Positions 6,351 through 43,816 of a DNA stretch of 64,000 nucleotides are shown here, one piece after another. The stretch lies in assembly GCA_965240325.2 (NCBI GenBank), contig OZ251227.1:434001-498000 (forward strand), given 5' to 3'. The notes beneath the pieces were generated by a model. That model saw only the letters and a program-made list of their open reading frames with translations. It was not told the origin of the DNA and did no database searches. Positions within the stretch are counted from its first letter, which is position 1. Each line of letters starts with the position of its first letter. Both the position numbers and the translations under genes were made by a program. Source of the DNA: Rebecca billardiae RCC1528. Its lineage: Eukaryota > Protista > Haptophyta.

Positions 6351-6510
6351 GTTGTAACAATCATGCAATGTGCCAAGGGCCGTAAATGTATCACACCGGG
6401 CGCTGGGCGTCATTGGTGGCCTCGATCCCCCGGTCGCCATCGTTGGCGGCGAGCCACGGTTGCTGGCACGCGAGCGCATCACGAGCCCTCGCGCTCTCCA
6501 GCGCATCGCC

Positions 6511-7626
6511 ATGAAGATGAGCGGCTCTCCAATGCGCATGCCCAACCACGCCTCGCGCCCCGAGCGGCCCCCGAACTCGCCGATAGACACGAACGCGCCG
6601 CGGTTCTCAACTGCTGCTGCGACGCCGCATGTGAGCTCATGGAGCACAGACGATGTGGCACTGTGGCTGGCGAAGGAGCACGGGGTGGCAAAGGAAGTGG
6701 TTGACGCCGCCAAGCGGAACCGTGTGACTGGGCCGCTGCTCGCCGAGCTCGACGATGCGGCGTGGCTCGAGCTCGGGGTCGTCTCTGCGCTCAAGCGCGC
6801 CAAGCTGCGGCTTGGCGTTAGGGACGCCCTCGAGACGCCCGCGCCGCCGTCGAGCGCGATCGTGCACCGCATCCCGATCGTGAACGTCTTCTTCGACCTG
6901 CTGTTTGACGAGATGCCGCCGAAGCTCGACTCGGTCAAGAGCACACTCGACACGATCGCGCTGCTTTCCGCGCTCTTCCTCACGATCGCCATGGCCATCC
7001 CAGCCAGCGTCGACTACGACGAGCTGATGGCGGCCAGGGCGCGGTTCGACGCGGCGCCGTATAACGCGTGGGCGTCGGGCTCCGATCTCGTCGAGGCCTT
7101 CGCCCTATACTCCGCCCTCTCCACGTACATGCTCGGCTCGTCGCTGATCGCGACGGTGGTGACGCTCGTGTCTCTCATCGTGACGCAGGACGACGTGAGC
7201 GACCGCGTCGAGGTGCGGCAGCGCTTCTGGATCTTCGCGCGGTGGGGCGCGCTCTGGGCGATCCTCGCGCTCGTGCTTGGTGTCGTTGCGTGCTTCTTCG
7301 CCTTCAACCGGCTCATCTTCGTCAAGATCCCGGACATCGCCGTCGAGCGCGCGGGTGCGGCCGGCCTGCAGTCGCCGTCCTCTGTGATCAGCGGGTTCCG
7401 CACCCTCGCGTACGCCAGCCTGCTCGGCACGCTCATCTCCACGTTCATGCTGATGGGCTTGGGCAAGGGGCATGCGATAGCGTACCTCCTCGAGGAAGCG
7501 CGGGCGCCGCGCCCGGCGCGCTGGCCGTCTAACAAGATCATGTCCTGGGCAGCAGGTGCGTCGTCATCGCGGACGGACGACGTGGGTCAGCATGACGATG
7601 GGGATACCGCGGGGGCTGACGAGTGA
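6511..7626 (+). CDS. SAM-domain protein with a C-terminal ~4-TM membrane domain
   Basis: SAM signature WSTDDVALWL...NRVTGPLLAELDDAAWLELGV, followed by four hydrophobic helices (TIALLSALFLTIAMAI; LSTYMLGSSLIATVVTLVSLIV; ALWAILALVLGVVACFFAF; LAYASLLGTLISTFMLMGL). Start codon uncertain. Confidence 0.75.
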   Translation: MKMSGSPMRMPNHASRPERPPNSPIDTNAPRFSTAAATPHVSSWSTDDVALWLAKEHGVAKEVVDAAKRNRVTGPLLAELDDAAWLELGVVSALKRAKLRLGVRDALETPAPPSSAIVHRIPIVNVFFDLLFDEMPPKLDSVKSTLDTIALLSALFLTIAMAIPASVDYDELMAARARFDAAPYNAWASGSDLVEAFALYSALSTYMLGSSLIATVVTLVSLIVTQDDVSDRVEVRQRFWIFARWGALWAILALVLGVVACFFAFNRLIFVKIPDIAVERAGAAGLQSPSSVISGFRTLAYASLLGTLISTFMLMGLGKGHAIAYLLEEARAPRPARWPSNKIMSWAAGASSSRTDDVGQHDDGDTAGADE

Positions 7627-8048: not shown

Positions 8049-11000
8049 ATGTCGAACGACGCAGTCGTTGAAGACGTGGCCGCCGCGAGCACGGCAATGA
8101 CGGAGAAGGTGGCTGATTCGATGTCACGCCAGGAGGAGTGGATCTCGATGCAGCAGATGAAGCAGCTCGTGCGCGCGCGCGCGCGCGCGCGCGTCCGCCC
8201 GCGCGCGTGCACCTCGCGTGCTCATGGCTGCGCATGCTTCTGACCCCCCCCCCGCACCCGCCATCACCGCGGCGCAGGTGCGCGTGTGCTGCCTGGAGGT
8301 TATGGGCGCAGCCCCCGCGCAGCTCGAGCACTACAAGCAGGAGGTGCGCGAGCTGCAGTCTCTCGTGTCTGACTTCCGCAAGGAAGTGGCCGAGCTCAAG
8401 TCGATGCGCACAGCGGGCTCTGACGATGGGCTGAGCGCGGCGGACGCGGCGGGCGTGGACGGCGGCCGGGCGAGCCACCCACCCGCGGCGCCCTCCGCCG
8501 GCGCGGCCGAGGGCCCACCGCTCACGCTGGGCGGCGGCGCGCTGGGCGGCGGCGTGGCGGCCGCCGGCGCGGCCGCGGGCTCGGTGCAGCGCATTTACAT
8601 CGAGCTCGACGGCGCGCCGATCCAGTCGTGGTACGAGAACCGGCCGATGCCGCCGATCTCGGTGAAGCTCGTCGACGACAAGTCTCCGCCCTCCCTCTTC
8701 ACCGACGCGTCCGAGCTCACCCTGCGCATCTCGCTGTGCAACGGGCGCGGGCTGGCCGAGGAGCGCACGGCGAACGGCGCGCAGGACCTGCTGGTGGGCG
8801 AGCGCGAGGTGAAGGTGGTGGACGGGCGCGCGACGTTCCAGAACCTGCGCGTGATGGAGATCTCGCAGAAGCACTACGGCTCGTTCCAGCTCGCCATCGC
8901 CCCGGTCGGCGCGCCCGCCGGCCTGGCGATCCAGCCGCTGCGCACGAAGCAGTTTGTGGTGCAGGTCGGCCGGATGTGGAGCAAGCGGCGCAAGTCGGAG
9001 GACGAGCTGCAGCCGGACGACCCGATCTCGCAGATCCCGGGCGTGGGCAAGCAGTACGTCTCGCGGCTGCAGGTGCAGGGCATCACCGAGATCCGCCAGT
9101 TCGCGCAGCTCTGCTCCACCGAGGAGGGCAAGGCGATGCTGCAGCGCATGTTCAAGGGCGACAAGCTCAAGAACTCGCTCAACGACGCAAAGTTCAACCA
9201 GATGGTCGAGCAGGCGAACAAGGTGATGGTGCACGCGTCGGCGGAGGCGCTGGCGAGCCGCGCCGGCGGCGCCAAGCGCATCCGCACGCCCGCGGGCGCG
9301 CCCGCGCCGAGCGGCTACCCGCCGCAGCCGCCGCAGCCACAGCCACACCAGCCACACCAGCCGCCGCAGCCGCAGCCGCCGCCCGCGGGCTCGTCGATGA
9401 TGGCGCACCCGCCGATGCCGCCGGCGCACATGCTCGCGCAGTCGCAGTCGGCGGGCGCGGAGGCGCACGCCCAGCAGTCGCGCCCGCTCTACCCGCAGCA
9501 CCTGCCGCCCTACTTTGCGCGCGAGCAGCACGAGCACCCGGCCGCACCGCCCGGCGTCGGCATGACGAGCGGCCACGGCTCGCCCCACCAGCACGACCAG
9601 CACGACGACCACGGGCCAGCGCGCTCAGACGAGGCGTCGGGCGACTCGGGCGTGCACTCGGCCGGCTCGCCGCACTACGCGAGTGACCGGCACGACACGT
9701 CGGGCAGCGTGACCCCCGTGCACCGCGCCGAGCTCGCCACGCCGGCCGTGCGCCCGCACGCCGCCGTGCTCCCCGGCAGCGACCAGCTGTCGATGGACGA
9801 GATCATGACGCTGTTTGCTGAGGACGGCGGAGCGCACCACCGCGGCGCGATCGCGCTCGGCGGCGGCGGCGCGCCGCACGACGGCGCGGACGCGCCGCCC
9901 GTGTACCGCGGACGCGCGCCGCCCACGCTGCTGCCCGCCGGCTCGCGCGGCACGCCCGCGCCCATCCAGGTGCGCACGGCCGGCGGCGCGGACGGCTCGC
10001 TCGCCACGCCGCGCGAGGTGTCGATGGTCGGCTCGGACGACAGCGGCGCGCCGCCGCCGCCGCCGCCGCTCCCGCGCGGCCTCTCCACCGAGCAGATGCT
10101 CGCGGCCGCGTGCATCGGCGCGCCGCACGGCACGGCGGGCGCGTTCCCCTCCGGCACCGGCGACTCGGAGCTCGCCGGCGTCGGCCCGCTGCTCGACGCC
10201 TTCGACGTGGACAGCCTGACCATCGACGGCGCGCTCGACGCGACCGAGGGACCTCTCGTGCGCTCGGCCGCGGGCGGCGTGCGCGCGCCGTTCACGCCGG
10301 CGCCGGTCGAGGTGGGCGGCTCGGCCATCGTCGAGGCGGACGACACGGTGGGCACGCCGCCGTCCCGCCAGCCCATCTCCGTCGAGGCGCTCAAGAACAA
10401 GGTGGCGCAGCCCTCGCCGGGCGCGCGCCACGGCATGGCCGCCCTGCAGGAGCTGCTGCACGCGCTGCCCGCCGCGCCGGACAAGAGCGCGCGCGCCGCC
10501 GCGCAGCCCGAGCCGGCCGGCGCGCGCGCGCCGCGCGCCGCGCCGCGCGCCGCGCCGCACAGCGCGAGCTCCGAGGACACGTCCGTCGCGCCCAAGCCGG
10601 CCGGCGGCGCGCGGCCGTTCGCGCAGATGTCGGACGCGCACGTCGCCGCGTGGCACGGCGACCCCGAGGCGCTGCTCGCCGCGCTGCGCCGCTCGTCTGC
10701 CACGGACACGGAGCGCTCGGGCTGCACGGTGCTCGACGCGGCCGCGCTCGGCGGCGACGCGCAGTGCGTGGAGATCCTGCTCAAGCTGAGCGCGCGCGGC
10801 GGCGGCGGGGACGAGGCGGCGCGCGCGGCGCAGCCCGACGCGTCCAAGCAGCGCGCGGCCGAGCGCGCGAGCGGCGCGGCGCTGCTCCCGCCGCGCCCCA
10901 GGCTCGAGCGCGCCGGTTCCTCTGCGGGCGTGGGCGGGCTGCCGCTGCCGCCGCTGCACGTGTGCATCGCCTCCGGCCGGCGCTCGGCCGGGGTGGTGCG

Positions 11001-12059
11001 CGCGCTGCTCAGCGGCGGCCACGCGGTGAACGAGCGCGCGGCGTCCGGGCTGAGCCCGCTGCACATCTGCGCGCACGTCGGCGACGTGCCGATCGCGCGC
11101 GAGCTGCTCGCCGCGGGCGCGGACGTGAACCAGCGCGAGCTCAAGCGCGGGCTGCGCCCCGCGCACTTTGCAGCGATCGGCGGCCACGCGGCGGTGCTCG
11201 AGCTGCTGCTCGCCGCGCCGGGCGGGCTGCCCTTCGACGAGGGCCCGGCGGAGAAGCCCGCGCCCGCGCAGAGCGACGGCGCTCCGCCGCGCTCGCCGCG
11301 CTCGCCTCTCTCGCTGCTGCTCTGCGCGGCGGTGCGCGCGCGCGCGCCGCCGCCCGGCGCGCGCGGCGCCTCGCGCGCGCGCCGCGGGCCTCCGCCGTCG
11401 CGCGATGGCTCAACCGCCCGTGCCCGCCCCCGCGCCGCGCCGCCTGCCGTGCTGCCGCGCAGGTCTCGCACTCGCAGGCGTGCGTGCGCATCGCGCTGCG
11501 CCACCAGCCTGTGCGCTCCGTGCGCTCCGCCCTCGCCGCGTGCGCGGTGAGCGGCGCCGCCGAGTGCCTGCAGCTGCTGCTGGCCGAGGGCGCGGCCAGC
11601 CCGCGCGCGTCGGCGGCCGTGGCTGCGGACGGCGCGCCGAGGCTCGTGGACACGCACGACGCCGACGGCATCACGCTGCTCATGCTCGCCGCGCTGCATG
11701 CACACGAGGTGCGCGCGAGGCGCGAGCGCGCCGCGGCCCGTGCCCGCGCCGGCGCGCAGCTCTCACACGCGCGCCACCGCCCTCCGCGCGCACCCGGCGC
11801 GCCGCAGGCATGTGTGGGCGTGCTGCTCGAGCACGGCGCGAGCGTCGACCGACGCGCGACCGGCGCGCAGTGGGGCGTGCTGCACTTCGCCGCGGCGGCA
11901 GGCGACGACGCGGTGCCCATCACAGAGCAGCTGCTGGCCGCGGGCGCAGACGCGGCCCTTGAGAGCGCCGACGGCGCAACGGCTGTGCAGCTCGCAGACC
12001 TCCTCGGGCACAGCGCGATGCAGCGCGTCCTGAGCGCCGCAACCGCGTCGCGCGCATGA
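8049..12059 (+). CDS. Putative transcription factor: CBP60-like DNA-binding region, P/Q/H-rich region and C-terminal ankyrin repeats; introns 8169-8277, 11332-11462, 11709-11807
   Basis: Three GTGCGC..GCAG introns join the ORFs in frame. Ankyrin repeats are clear (GLSPLHICAHVGDVPIARELLAAGADVN, GLRPAHFAAIGGH, GITLLMLAALHAHEACVGVLLEHGASVD). The 8581-9225 segment resembles the plant CBP60 core. Confidence 0.75.
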
Positions 12060-42631: not shown

Positions 42632-43816
42632 TCACACGTCTGGCTCTGGCTCGTCCTGAGCAGCACTGCCAGGAGGGTCCTCCGCACCCTCCACGCTCTC
42701 CACGCTGCCCGGGGGCAGATCGAGACCCGCCCGATCGTCGCGCTCAGGAGGCATCGGCGGGGCACCAGTGGCGATCCCCGGATCTGTGGTCGCGACGGGC
42801 ATACTCGGCGGCCATCCCATGAGTTCCGCCGGCCCCAACCCCATCCGGCCGAGCACCAGGCCCGCAACGAGCGAGGCGAGCGCGGCTGACCACGACCAGC
42901 CGCCAACGCGCGCTGCGGGCTTTGCGCGCTCGCCGGCGCTGCGCGCGCGTGAGGCGCTCGCCGCCTGCTTGGGCGGGGAGGTCGCGGCGAGGCGGGGATC
43001 GAGCTCGACGGGCGAGTCCTCCTCGGGCCACGTTGCCGCCGCGGCGAGCACGCGCTCGCGCACCTCCTCCCCAAGCCCGTCAAGCGCAAGCTCGCCATCC
43101 GCGTCTGCAACCGACCGATCGGCGCCGCGCGCGAGGAGCAGCGCGAGCAGCGTCTCGTGCTCGCACATCGCGGCCATATGCAGTGCGGTGAGCCCGTCGC
43201 TATCGGTCGCATTCGCTGAGACCCCTCGGGCGATCAGCGCCCGCGCCACGTCCACGTGCCCCGAGTCGCTCGCCCAGTGCAAGAGCGTGCGCCCGTCCTC
43301 GTCCGTGCGCTGCAGCAGCGCCGCGCCGCTGTCCGGCGCCTCGTCGAGCAGATCGAGCAGCCGCGCGAGCTCGCCCTGCTGGGCACACTCGATGGCCCGC
43401 TCGTGCACGCTGAGCCCCCCCGGCGGGGCCGCTGGCTTGGGCTGCGCCGGCATGCTGAACACCGCAGCGCCGACGCGTGACATGAGCTGGTCCTCAACCT
43501 CTGCTGCCATCTCGTCGTCCTCGAGGCCGTCGTCCGCGCCCGAGCCGGACGCGCCGCAGAGCTGGGCGACGGCCTGAACGTACACATGCTGCGCAGCAGA
43601 GGTGCCCAGCCCCACCACGCTGCGCCAGGCCGTCCACTTGGCATGCTCCTGCACGCGCAGTCTGCTCGGTCCAGCGCTCGGCGCGTCGCCCTCGGTCGCC
43701 TGCTTGTACAGCGCGTACAGGCGCAGCTTGTGCGACGTGCCCAGTGTGGGCATCTGCGACGAGCGCGCCAGCTCGACCGCCGCTCGGAACTGCTCCTCTG
43801 TGGCGTCTTGGCCCAT
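42632..43816 (-). CDS. Acyl-CoA-binding protein with ankyrin repeats (ACBD6-like) and a C-terminal TM segment
   Basis: KLRLYALYKQATEG...KWTAW (ACBP). Ankyrins GRTLLHWASDSGH and GLTALHMAAMCEH. Confidence 0.9.
   Translation of the reverse strand: MGQDATEEQFRAAVELARSSQMPTLGTSHKLRLYALYKQATEGDAPSAGPSRLRVQEHAKWTAWRSVVGLGTSAAQHVYVQAVAQLCGASGSGADDGLEDDEMAAEVEDQLMSRVGAAVFSMPAQPKPAAPPGGLSVHERAIECAQQGELARLLDLLDEAPDSGAALLQRTDEDGRTLLHWASDSGHVDVARALIARGVSANATDSDGLTALHMAAMCEHETLLALLLARGADRSVADADGELALDGLGEEVRERVLAAAATWPEEDSPVELDPRLAATSPPKQAASASRARSAGERAKPAARVGGWSWSAALASLVAGLVLGRMGLGPAELMGWPPSMPVATTDPGIATGAPPMPPERDDRAGLDLPPGSVESVEGAEDPPGSAAQDEPEPDV

What the first reader, a model, noticed from the sequence alone, without database searches (positions are those of the whole stretch)
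8049..12059. CBP60/SARD1-like DNA-binding region fused to ankyrin repeats: an NF-kB p105-like architecture in an alga
Seen: 8581-9225 encodes DLLVGEREVKVVDGRATFQNLRVMEIS...SFQLAI...IQPLRTKQFVVQVGR...LQPDDPISQIPGVGKQYVSRLQVQGITEIRQFAQL...LNDAKFNQMVEQANKV. By eye this is colinear with the plant CBP60 core as I recall it (PLLTGDLQVTLKEGVGTL..F..NSS...KFRLG...IREAKTEAFTVKDHR...PALNDEVWRLEKIGKDG.FHKRL...GI.TVEDFL.L...MSNKMW..LVEHAKTC). Within it is a basic NLS-like SKRRKS. A P/Q/H-rich activation-like region and about six or more ankyrin repeats follow. Established: CBP60g/SARD1 are plant immune transcription factors, and p105/p100 couple an Ig-fold DNA-binding domain to autoinhibitory ankyrins. 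Inference: a non-plant CBP60-like factor with a built-in ankyrin regulatory module, possibly a stress or immune switch. I know of no description of this fusion.
Basis: partly seen in the sequence, partly recalled or inferred. Interest (0 to 1): 0.85.

Follow-up and report, generated by a model that had tools for sequence, protein, structure and literature searches.

The report
CBP60-like DNA-binding domain fused to ankyrins
A haptophyte alga carries one gene that joins a distant relative of the plant immune regulator CBP60's DNA-binding module to a tail of about nine ankyrin repeats, a layout like animal NF-kB p105 that is conserved in related protists and that I found described in no paper, though its function is untested.

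Summary
Window 8049-12059 (+) is one gene of four exons. Its three short introns all start GTGCGCGCG, and it encodes about 1223 aa.

The parts, in order:
- N-terminal coiled coil
- Ig-like beta-sandwich
- invariant RMWSKRRK motif
- helix-hairpin-helix (HhH) domain
- long P/Q/H-rich linker
- about nine ankyrin repeats

CBP60 homology is real but remote:
- Pfam misses the window protein. One ortholog reaches 25.4 bits against a cut-off of 25.5.
- The haptophyte clade joins a wider non-plant family at hhalign 99.9%.
- That family matches verified plant CBP60 at 96% (E 2e-9, 204 columns, N and M subdomains). Shuffled and reversed controls give 0.6% or less.
- The third CBP60 subdomain is absent.

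The AlphaFold model's best ESM Atlas match is a CBP60A cluster. Its best PDB matches are velvet, NF-kB p65, Runt and STAT DNA-binding domains. A plant CBP60 model returns the same neighbours.

The ankyrin fusion is present in 15 of 16 haptophyte orthologs, including complete transcripts, and in centrohelid proteins.

DNA binding, and any p105-like autoinhibition by the ankyrins, are inferred and not shown. No RNA run was listed for this genome. The scan had not noted this elsewhere.

The parts
8049..8168 (+). Exon 1: ATG and the first 40 codons (MSNDAVVED...WISMQQMKQL)
   Evidence: Sequence. The junction-spanning motif is conserved in orthologs. Spliced model.
8169..8277 (+). Intron 1, 109 nt, GTGCGCGCG...GCGCAG, with a (GC)n run
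   Evidence: tblastn of orthologs starts at 8275/8278.
8278..11331 (+). Exon 2: rest of the coiled coil, DNA-binding module, linker and ankyrin repeats 1-4, plus the start of repeat 5
8121..8403 (+). Predicted N-terminal coiled coil (spliced aa about 25-82; spans intron 1)
   Evidence: Heptad-like sequence conserved across 16 orthologs. The coiled-coil reading is an inference and was not modelled.
8578..8982 (+). Ig-like beta-sandwich, the counterpart of the CBP60 N domain (PF07887)
8971..8997 (+). Basic motif RMWSKRRKS in the flexible hinge after the last strand; NLS-like
   Evidence: QVGRMWxKRRK is invariant in the haptophyte clade except S->C in P0015. The pLDDT dips here. It is not conserved in the other subfamilies.
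8989..9243 (+). Helical helix-hairpin-helix domain (IPGVGKQY hairpin), the counterpart of the CBP60 M domain (PF20451)
9316..9612 (+). P/Q/H-rich low-complexity stretch of the linker
   Evidence: Translation. No Pfam family. Absent from the shorter linkers of orthologs.
9787..9825 (+). Acidic-hydrophobic motif LSMDEIMTLFAED, matching ortholog consensus FSMxELLLLASxD
   Evidence: Alignment A1. Coordinates. Its role (activation or export motif) is an inference.
10183..10218 (+). Linker motif GPLLDAFDVDSL, read by eye against ortholog consensus GFAALDAL
   Evidence: The window sequence is and the ortholog consensus. MAFFT did not align the two motifs to each other; the match is by eye.
10639..10662 (+). 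Motif HVAAWHGD just before the ankyrins, read by eye against ortholog consensus LRAAWRGD
   Evidence: The window sequence is and the ortholog consensus. MAFFT did not align the two motifs to each other; the match is by eye.
10714..12056 (+). About nine ankyrin repeats, interrupted by introns 2 and 3
   Evidence: Pfam Ank/Ank_2 hits. Repeat cores are listed. tblastn of ortholog ankyrin regions.
11332..11462 (+). Intron 2, 131 nt, GTGCGCGCG...CCGCAG; shifts frame 1 to frame 3. An alternative acceptor at 11477 is also in frame.
   Evidence: Removing it restores an ankyrin-like repeat.
11463..11708 (+). Exon 3: ankyrin repeats 5-7
11709..11807 (+). Intron 3, 99 nt, GTGCGCGCG...CCGCAG; in frame, so it is predicted from the splice motif and repeat register only
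11808..12059 (+). Exon 4: ankyrin repeats 7-9 and the stop codon at 12057-12059

Best explanation
One nuclear gene of a haptophyte, probably of the Pavlovales group, encodes a protein of about 1223 aa. Its core is a two-part DNA-binding module homologous to the N and M subdomains of the conserved domain of plant CBP60/SARD1. The first part is an Ig-fold beta-sandwich of the Rel/velvet/Runt/STAT kind. The second is a helix-hairpin-helix domain.

Shown here:
- the gene model, by homology and splice motifs;
- the remote homology to CBP60;
- the fold;
- the conserved fusion to a C-terminal array of about nine ankyrin repeats across haptophytes and centrohelids.

Inferred:
- The protein is a dimeric DNA-binding transcription regulator, dimerised through the N-terminal coiled coil.
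- It enters the nucleus through the invariant KRRK motif next to the sandwich.
- It carries an acidic-hydrophobic activation-type motif in the linker.
- The ankyrin tail controls it, either by folding back on the DNA-binding/NLS region as in NF-kB p105 or Relish, or by recruiting partners.

My odds: single fused gene with a CBP60-type module about 0.85; DNA-binding regulator about 0.6; p105-like autoinhibition about 0.25.
For: Orthologs:
- 16 proteins at E 1e-46 to 1e-56, 15 of them with ankyrin Pfam hits. They include Prymnesium parvum, Chrysochromulina tobinii and complete MMETSP transcripts.
- Two Pterocystis (centrohelid) proteins and six other distant members also carry ankyrins.

Homology chain:
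- The haptophyte profile finds about 60 full-domain relatives at E 1e-20 to 1e-7 among 1.84e9 proteins.
- hhalign of the haptophyte clade against that group gives 99.9%, E 3.5e-33.
- The family against Pfam-verified plant CBP60 gives 95.8-96.2%, E 2e-9 to 7e-9, over 203-204 columns.
- Reversed or column-shuffled controls give 0.6% or less.
- Pfam PF07887 hits ortholog P0014 at E 1.8e-5.
- A CBP60 HMM hits 70 real sequences against 4 reversed decoys at E<=10. The window protein scores E 0.006.

Structure and language-model features:
- ESM feature neighbours are all PF07887 clusters.
- The AF2 model has pLDDT 85.7, and its best Atlas match is a CBP60A cluster at TM 0.58 over residues 1-223.
- A plant CBP60 model returns the same list.
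Against: - The window protein itself has no Pfam CBP60 hit at E<=1.
- The haptophyte clade alone against CBP60 gives only 2-27% hhalign probability, so the link is transitive.
- Generic Ig domains (complement MG, pilus chaperones, GH2) are mixed into the list. Bacterial giant Big_1/cohesin proteins also hit the sandwich, so the sandwich alone is not specific for DNA binding.
- The CBP60 C subdomain is absent.
- No DNA binding, localisation or processing data exist.
- The KRRK motif does not co-occur with ankyrins outside the haptophyte clade.
- No RNA run for this genome was listed, so the introns and the long linker are unverified.
Confidence: 0.6

Rival explanations
1. Same protein and same DNA-binding module, but the ankyrin tail is not an intramolecular inhibitor. 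It is a platform that recruits partner proteins, as in Swi6/Mbp1, CAMTA or the Notch-CSL complex.
For: - Ankyrin arrays are general protein-binding modules (established knowledge).
- Linker length varies widely between this gene and its orthologs, which argues against a tightly constrained fold-back geometry.
- The KRRK motif is not linked to the presence of ankyrins across the family.
- Ankyrin-less paralogs exist.
Against: Nothing here speaks directly against it. The basic motif at the C-terminal edge of the Ig domain, which is the position IkB masks in Rel proteins (established knowledge), is invariant in the ankyrin-bearing haptophyte clade.
Confidence: 0.3
2. Not a gene-specific transcription factor. 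It would be a non-specific DNA or chromatin-binding scaffold, for example in repair, chromatin tethering or nuclear envelope function, that uses the HhH/BAF-like domain.
For: - HhH motifs typically bind the DNA backbone without sequence specificity (established knowledge).
- JGI pipelines named relatives 'flap endonuclease-1-like'.
Against: - No nuclease or other catalytic domain was found by Pfam.
- The homologous CBP60 conserved domain binds DNA sequence-specifically (Zhang 2010 and Qin 2018, as cited in bioRxiv 10.1101/2020.07.16.207134).
- The top fold neighbours of the sandwich are sequence-specific transcription factors.
Confidence: 0.15
3. The resemblance to CBP60 is not common descent. 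It would be an independent pairing of a generic Ig-like (Big_1-type) sandwich with an HhH motif.
For: - The window protein and most relatives miss the Pfam CBP60 models.
- Bacterial Ig-repeat proteins hit the sandwich profile at E about 1e-25 to 1e-8 through many summed repeats.
- The branch between CBP60 and the non-plant clade is very long, 3.4 changes per column.
Against: - One colinear hhalign alignment of 203-204 columns runs through both subdomains and the hinge at 95.8-96.2%, while controls give 0.6% or less.
- The best Atlas fold match spans both subdomains of a CBP60A cluster.
- ESM feature neighbours are exclusively PF07887 clusters.
Confidence: 0.07
4. Gene-model artefact: two adjacent genes, a DNA-binding-domain gene and an ankyrin gene, read as one because stop codons are rare in this G+C-rich DNA.
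For: - Spurious long ORFs abound in this window.
- The roughly 490-aa linker has no family match and is far longer than in orthologs.
- No RNA run was listed.
Against: - 15 of 16 orthologs, including complete transcripts, have both halves in one frame.
- The three conserved linker motifs occur in the same order in the window.
- No in-frame stop lies between 8278 and 11331.
Confidence: 0.04

Closest known systems
Plant CBP60 family (CBP60a-g, SARD1): Pfam PF07887 + PF20451 + PF20452
   Same: - The Ig-like sandwich and HhH domain are homologous to the N and M subdomains of the CBP60 conserved domain. They are colinear, including the hinge: R..LY..K/P in CBP60 and the distant group, RMWSKRRK here.
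- The fold neighbours are the same.
   Different: - It scores below Pfam thresholds.
- It lacks the C subdomain (PF20452).
- No calmodulin-binding region was identified.
- It has an N-terminal coiled coil and a C-terminal ankyrin array that the plant proteins found here lack. All 120 best plant hits list only the CBP60 Pfam domains, apart from PF09805 in one, P0200.
- It comes from Haptista, whereas the family is called plant-specific in current papers (PMC11049924, PMC13354941).
NF-kB p105/p100 and Drosophila Relish
   Same: - The domain order matches: Ig-fold DNA-binding domain, basic NLS-like motif at its C-terminal edge, flexible linker, C-terminal ankyrin array.
   Different: - There is no sequence match to the Rel homology Pfam models.
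- The second (dimerisation) Ig domain is replaced by an HhH domain, and dimerisation is presumably through a coiled coil.
- No death domain is present.
- Processing or masking is untested.
- The architecture is therefore convergent.
Fungal velvet domain regulators (VosA, VelB, VeA)
   Different: No Pfam velvet hit. Velvet proteins have no HhH domain and no ankyrin tail.
CAMTA (CG-1 + TIG + ankyrin + IQ) and yeast Spt23/Mga2 (IPT + ankyrin + TM)
   Same: An Ig-type domain is followed by ankyrin repeats in a transcription regulator. Spt23/Mga2 are processed like p105 (my own knowledge, not checked here).
   Different: No CG-1, TIG/IPT or IQ Pfam hit, and I saw no C-terminal hydrophobic segment by eye. 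In CAMTA the Ig-type TIG domain is not the DNA-binding domain.

Membership tests
Plant CBP60 family | Pfam PF07887 (Calmodulin_bind, N domain) at or above the gathering score of 25.5 bits | tested here: not met
   The window protein has no hit at E<=1. The best ortholog, P0014, scores 25.4 bits, E 1.8e-5, on HMM positions 80-146/147. Three of 17 orthologs and 1 of 61 distant relatives hit weakly. Profile-profile homology is nonetheless 95.8-96.2%.
Plant CBP60 family | Pfam PF20451 (central, HhH-like M domain) | tested here: inconclusive
   There is no Pfam hit, but the hhalign alignment runs through CBP60 columns 168-241, which correspond to PF20451. HHH_5, IMS_HHH_1 and DUF4332 hit the same residues.
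Plant CBP60 family | Pfam PF20452 (C domain) | tested here: not met
   There is no Pfam hit, and the hhalign alignment ends at CBP60 column 241 of 306. In the window protein a disordered P/Q/H-rich linker follows.
Plant CBP60 family | Same fold as the CBP60 conserved domain | tested here: met
   The best Atlas fold match is a CBP60A cluster, TM 0.58 over residues 1-223. Three of the top five rows are PF07887 clusters. A plant CBP60 model shares the PDB neighbours.
Plant CBP60 family | Calmodulin-binding region and sequence-specific binding to GAAATTT-type sites | not testable with these tools
   In plants the CaM-binding regions lie outside the conserved domain (bioRxiv 10.1101/2020.07.16.207134). 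No reliable predictor was available here.
NF-kB p105/p100/Relish | Rel homology domain (sequence family) with two Ig domains | tested here: not met
NF-kB p105/p100/Relish | C-terminal IkB-like ankyrin array in the same polypeptide | tested here: met
   About nine repeats, conserved in 15 of 16 orthologs and in centrohelid relatives.
NF-kB p105/p100/Relish | NLS at the C-terminal edge of the DNA-binding domain, masked by the ankyrins; signal-induced processing | not testable with these tools
   The basic KRRK motif is present and invariant in the haptophyte clade. Masking and processing need experiments. Glycine runs occur in the linkers of some orthologs only.
Velvet family | Pfam velvet domain | tested here: not met
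   No hit. Fold similarity only.
CAMTA | CG-1 DNA-binding domain, TIG domain and IQ motifs | tested here: not met
   Only ankyrin families were found by Pfam.

The most novel reading that the evidence does not exclude
Haptista (haptophytes and centrohelids) have a signal-released transcription factor built like NF-kB p105 but from a CBP60-type DNA-binding module. The ankyrin tail would hold the KRRK/NLS and DNA-binding surface inactive until a stress, viral or Ca2+ signal removes it. In addition, the CBP60 module itself would belong to the Rel/velvet/Runt/STAT class of Ig-fold DNA binders. The master immune regulators of animals (NF-kB), fungi (velvet) and plants (CBP60g/SARD1), and this algal family, would then share one ancient fold class, and CBP60 would not be a plant invention.
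Probability: 0.15. Interest if true: 0.85.

Novelty: new variant of a known kind. Interest (0 to 1): 0.6.

Why it matters
CBP60g and SARD1 are master regulators of plant immunity. Current papers call the family plant-specific (PMC11049924, PMC13354941).

A remote but statistically supported sister family in haptophytes and centrohelids moves the origin of the CBP60 DNA-binding module outside land plants. It also provides an outgroup for working out which residues matter.

The conserved fusion to ankyrin repeats gives a domain order like NF-kB p105 or Relish. That suggests a testable, independently evolved 'tethered inhibitor' switch in ecologically dominant marine algae, whose transcription factors and antiviral or stress signalling are poorly known.

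Both the algal and the plant domains have velvet, Rel, STAT and Runt domains as nearest solved folds. This also gives a structural hypothesis for how CBP60 proteins bind DNA.

Tried and rejected
- **Pfam on the window protein.** A direct hmmscan of the protein and of 8581-9225 found only ankyrin hits and a weak HhH hit, with no CBP60.
- **PDB sequence search.** A profile search with the haptophyte alignment gave nothing at E<=10, so no solved relative is detectable by sequence.
- **Broad family alignment (search for homologous proteins).** I instead fetched plant CBP60 cDNAs from plant-associated metagenome contigs, using a back-translated WRLEKIGKDG pattern taken from the finding's own text, and verified them with Pfam.
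- **Haptophyte-only profile against CBP60.** It gives the same register but low probability, 2-27%, so I rely on the transitive link.
- **RNA evidence.** No sequencing run was listed.
- **KRRK and ankyrins.** I tested whether the KRRK motif tracks the presence of ankyrins across the family, as NLS masking might predict. It does not; KRRK is specific to the haptophyte clade.
- **Single origin of the ankyrin fusion.** On the quick tree, ankyrin-bearing lineages are scattered near the base of the non-plant clade. One origin is not excluded and gain cannot be told from loss. Many 'ankyrin-less' sequences come from short contigs and may be truncated.
- **Literature.** Searches for CBP60 with ankyrin, haptophyte, velvet, Rel or crystal structure found nothing relevant. 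Plant-TFClass (Trends Plant Sci 2024) is not in the library, so I could not check whether it already lists CBP60 as an Ig fold.
- **Minus-strand and other-frame ORFs over the locus**. I dismissed these as G+C-driven.
Full report
**The locus and gene model**

The window is 60-80% G+C, and long open frames occur in every frame, so an open frame alone means little here. On the + strand a 1110-codon frame runs from 8218 to 11550. An ankyrin-like reading continues in frame 3 to the stop at 12057-12059.

I built a four-exon model: 8049-8168, 8278-11331, 11463-11708 and 11808-12059. It gives a 1223-aa product with no internal stop. All three introns start GTGCGCGCG and end GCGCAG or CCGCAG, and they are 81-89% G+C.

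Support for each intron differs:
- Intron 1 is supported by a junction-spanning motif. The window has WISMQQMKQL|VRVCCLEVM and the orthologs have FVSMxKMQQMVRVTCLEVM. tblastn alignments of orthologs also begin at 8275-8278.
- Intron 2 is needed to change frame, and removing it restores an ankyrin-like repeat.
- Intron 3 is in frame and rests only on the splice motif and the repeat register.

No RNA run for this DNA was listed, so the model is not confirmed by transcripts of this organism.

The quoted peptides, the RMWSKRRKS motif (8971-8997), a P/Q/H-rich stretch (about 9316-9612) and ankyrin repeats are all present. Pfam finds ankyrin families at E down to 3e-14 in the main frame, and further ankyrin hits in the tail. 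By sequence I count about nine repeats.

**Orthologs and the fusion**

A search restricted to the N-terminal domain found 16 proteins at E 1e-46 to 1e-56, with 44-52% identity. They include Prymnesium parvum, Chrysochromulina tobinii and MMETSP transcripts marked complete. Fifteen of the 16 carry ankyrin Pfam domains.

The full alignment shows a shared plan:
- a coiled-coil-like N-terminus
- the conserved domain
- an invariant QVGRMWxKRRK
- an HhH motif
- a variable linker with three short conserved motifs (FSMxELLLLAS, GFAALDAL, LRAAWRGD)
- the ankyrin array

The window protein has all of these in the same order, but its linker is far longer.

On a quick tree the window sequence is sister to the 14 other haptophyte sequences, with support of 100. 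I did not test the organism's identity otherwise.

**Is the domain CBP60-like? Sequence evidence**

Pfam gives no CBP60 hit for the window protein at E<=1. Among the orthologs, 3 of 17 hit PF07887. The best is P0014 at E 1.8e-5, 25.4 bits against a cut-off of 25.5, on the C-terminal half of the model.

A profile of the haptophyte domain was searched against 1.84 billion representatives and found 203 proteins at E<=0.001. Among them, about 60 proteins at E 1e-20 to 1e-7 cover the whole domain but have no CBP60 annotation. Their Pfam hits are only HhH-type families, and eight also have ankyrins. Several are from the centrohelid Pterocystis. One of these aligns directly to window 8629-9243 by tblastn at E 6.6e-15.

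To get real plant CBP60 sequences I scanned metagenome contigs with a back-translation of WRLEKIGKDG, a motif quoted in the finding. This gave more than 120 loci. Nine cDNA-like open frames were verified as CBP60 by Pfam: PF07887 at E about 1e-53 to 1e-64 in eight, one N-terminally truncated frame at 2.7e-20, and all with PF20451 and PF20452. A later search named the same proteins CBP60 B/C/D of angiosperms.

The hhalign results:
- The 56-sequence non-plant family, which includes the window, against eight plant CBP60 domains gives 95.8% probability, E 7.2e-9, over 203 columns. It covers CBP60 columns 5-241 of 306, that is, the N and M subdomains.
- Variants of the family alignment give 94.3-96.2%.
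- Reversed or column-shuffled alignments give 0.6% or less, E 0.1 or higher.
- The haptophyte clade against the distant group gives 99.9%, E 3.5e-33.

A CBP60 HMM searched against the family plus reversed decoys hits 70 real and 4 decoy sequences at E<=10. The window protein scores E 0.006.

The homology is therefore real but remote and transitive. The third CBP60 subdomain (PF20452) has no counterpart.

**Structure**

An AlphaFold2 model of window 8578-9246 with the ortholog alignment has mean pLDDT 85.7. It shows a nine-strand sandwich (residues 1-135), a low-confidence hinge holding KRRK, and a helical domain (138-222).

- In the ESM Atlas the best fold match is a CBP60A cluster, TM 0.58 over residues 1-223. 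Three of the top five rows are PF07887 clusters, and two ciliate clusters also match.
- The language-model neighbours of the sequence are all PF07887 clusters, with a best score of 0.89, which the tool calls a lead only.
- Against the PDB, Foldseek ranks the VosA-VelB velvet complex first, then Runt and VeA among many antibodies.

**How it probably works**

Shown: a conserved single polypeptide with a CBP60-type Ig+HhH module and a C-terminal ankyrin array.

Inferred from the CBP60 conserved domain being a sequence-specific DNA binder (cited in bioRxiv 10.1101/2020.07.16.207134), and from the fold neighbours: the protein binds DNA and regulates transcription.

Inferred from sequence only: the N-terminal heptad region dimerises it, KRRK acts as an NLS or DNA contact, and LSMDEIMTLFAED is an activation-type motif.

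By analogy with p105 and Relish, the ankyrins might mask the NLS or DNA-binding surface until a signal removes them. I found nothing that tests this. One indirect check, co-occurrence of KRRK with ankyrins across the family, was negative. A partner-recruiting role for the ankyrins is about as likely.

**Distribution**

Ankyrin-bearing members occur in the haptophyte clade, in two Pterocystis proteins and in six other proteins of unknown origin. On the tree they sit near the base of the non-plant clade, with two large ankyrin-less groups nested among them. This is compatible with an old fusion followed by losses. However, the tree is a quick one with long branches, gain cannot be told from loss, and some short proteins may be truncated.

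**Novelty**

Papers in the library call CBP60 unique to plants or plant-specific (PMC11049924; PMC13354941 and PMC13486240). Large surveys cover land plants only. Searches combining CBP60 with ankyrin, haptophyte, velvet or Rel homology found nothing relevant.

One precomputed Pfam hit on an ortholog shows that databases may already flag a few of these proteins. I could not read Plant-TFClass, which may already classify the CBP60 fold.

I rate this a new variant of a known kind: a known DNA-binding module in a new lineage and a new, conserved architecture, with its function still to be shown.

Noticed in passing
window 8169-8277, 11332-11462, 11709-11807: All three predicted introns start with GTGCGCGCG, end with (G/C)CGCAG and are 81-89% G+C. 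The 9-mer occurs 20 times on the + strand of the window and five times in this gene. One of those five (10996) lies inside a conserved ankyrin repeat, so the motif alone does not mark an intron.
   Followed up: partly
window 10279 and linker 9250-10650: A further GTGCGCGCG sits in the linker, which is far longer than in orthologs. Part of the linker could be an unrecognised in-frame intron.
   Followed up: no
plant CBP60 model from A6 (L063:756-1673:-): The nearest solved folds of a plant CBP60 conserved-domain model are velvet, NF-kB, STAT, NFAT5 and Runt DNA-binding domains, with Pol X/POLQ-type HhH for the M subdomain. I found no paper in the library stating this.
   Followed up: partly
P0036, P0062, P0064, P0106 and others: Giant bacterial proteins with 11-22 tandem Ig-like repeats hit positions about 50-127 of the sandwich profile. 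An example is a Gemmatimonadota 'cohesin domain-containing protein' with Big_1 and CarboxypepD_reg repeats. The sandwich therefore shares the G-x-A-x-F-x-x-L...G-x-F-x-L signature of bacterial Ig-like domains.
   Followed up: partly
P0008 (Chrysochromulina tobinii Ctob_012434): The public gene model has an N-terminal Methyltransf_32 domain in front of the family's N-terminus and lacks most of the ankyrin region. The environmental near-identical proteins P0009 and P0010 do not show this, so it is probably a merged and truncated gene model.
   Followed up: no
A1 columns about 660-700 (P0008-P0010, P0013): Glycine runs (GGGGSGGG..., GGGGGGGGG) occur in the linkers of some orthologs, which recalls the glycine-rich processing stop of p105. 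They are not conserved across the family and are only weakly present in the window (GGGGAPHDG).
   Followed up: no
window 6370-7626 (+): The upstream open frame has weak SAM-domain hits below threshold (SAM_2 E 0.005, SAM_1 E 0.03), followed by hydrophobic stretches. It may be a SAM-domain membrane protein gene.
   Followed up: partly
window 43094-43396 (-): tblastn with the ankyrin parts of orthologs also hits a minus-strand ankyrin-like stretch here (E 7e-5 to 8e-4). This is a separate ankyrin-repeat gene with no CBP60-like domain nearby.
   Followed up: no
ESM Atlas rows: Two ciliate clusters of hypothetical proteins (TM 0.52 and 0.49) and an oomycete 'DG1062 N-terminal domain' cluster (PF28397) resemble the model. 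The Ig(+HhH) module may therefore be more widespread in eukaryotes than Haptista and plants.
   Followed up: no
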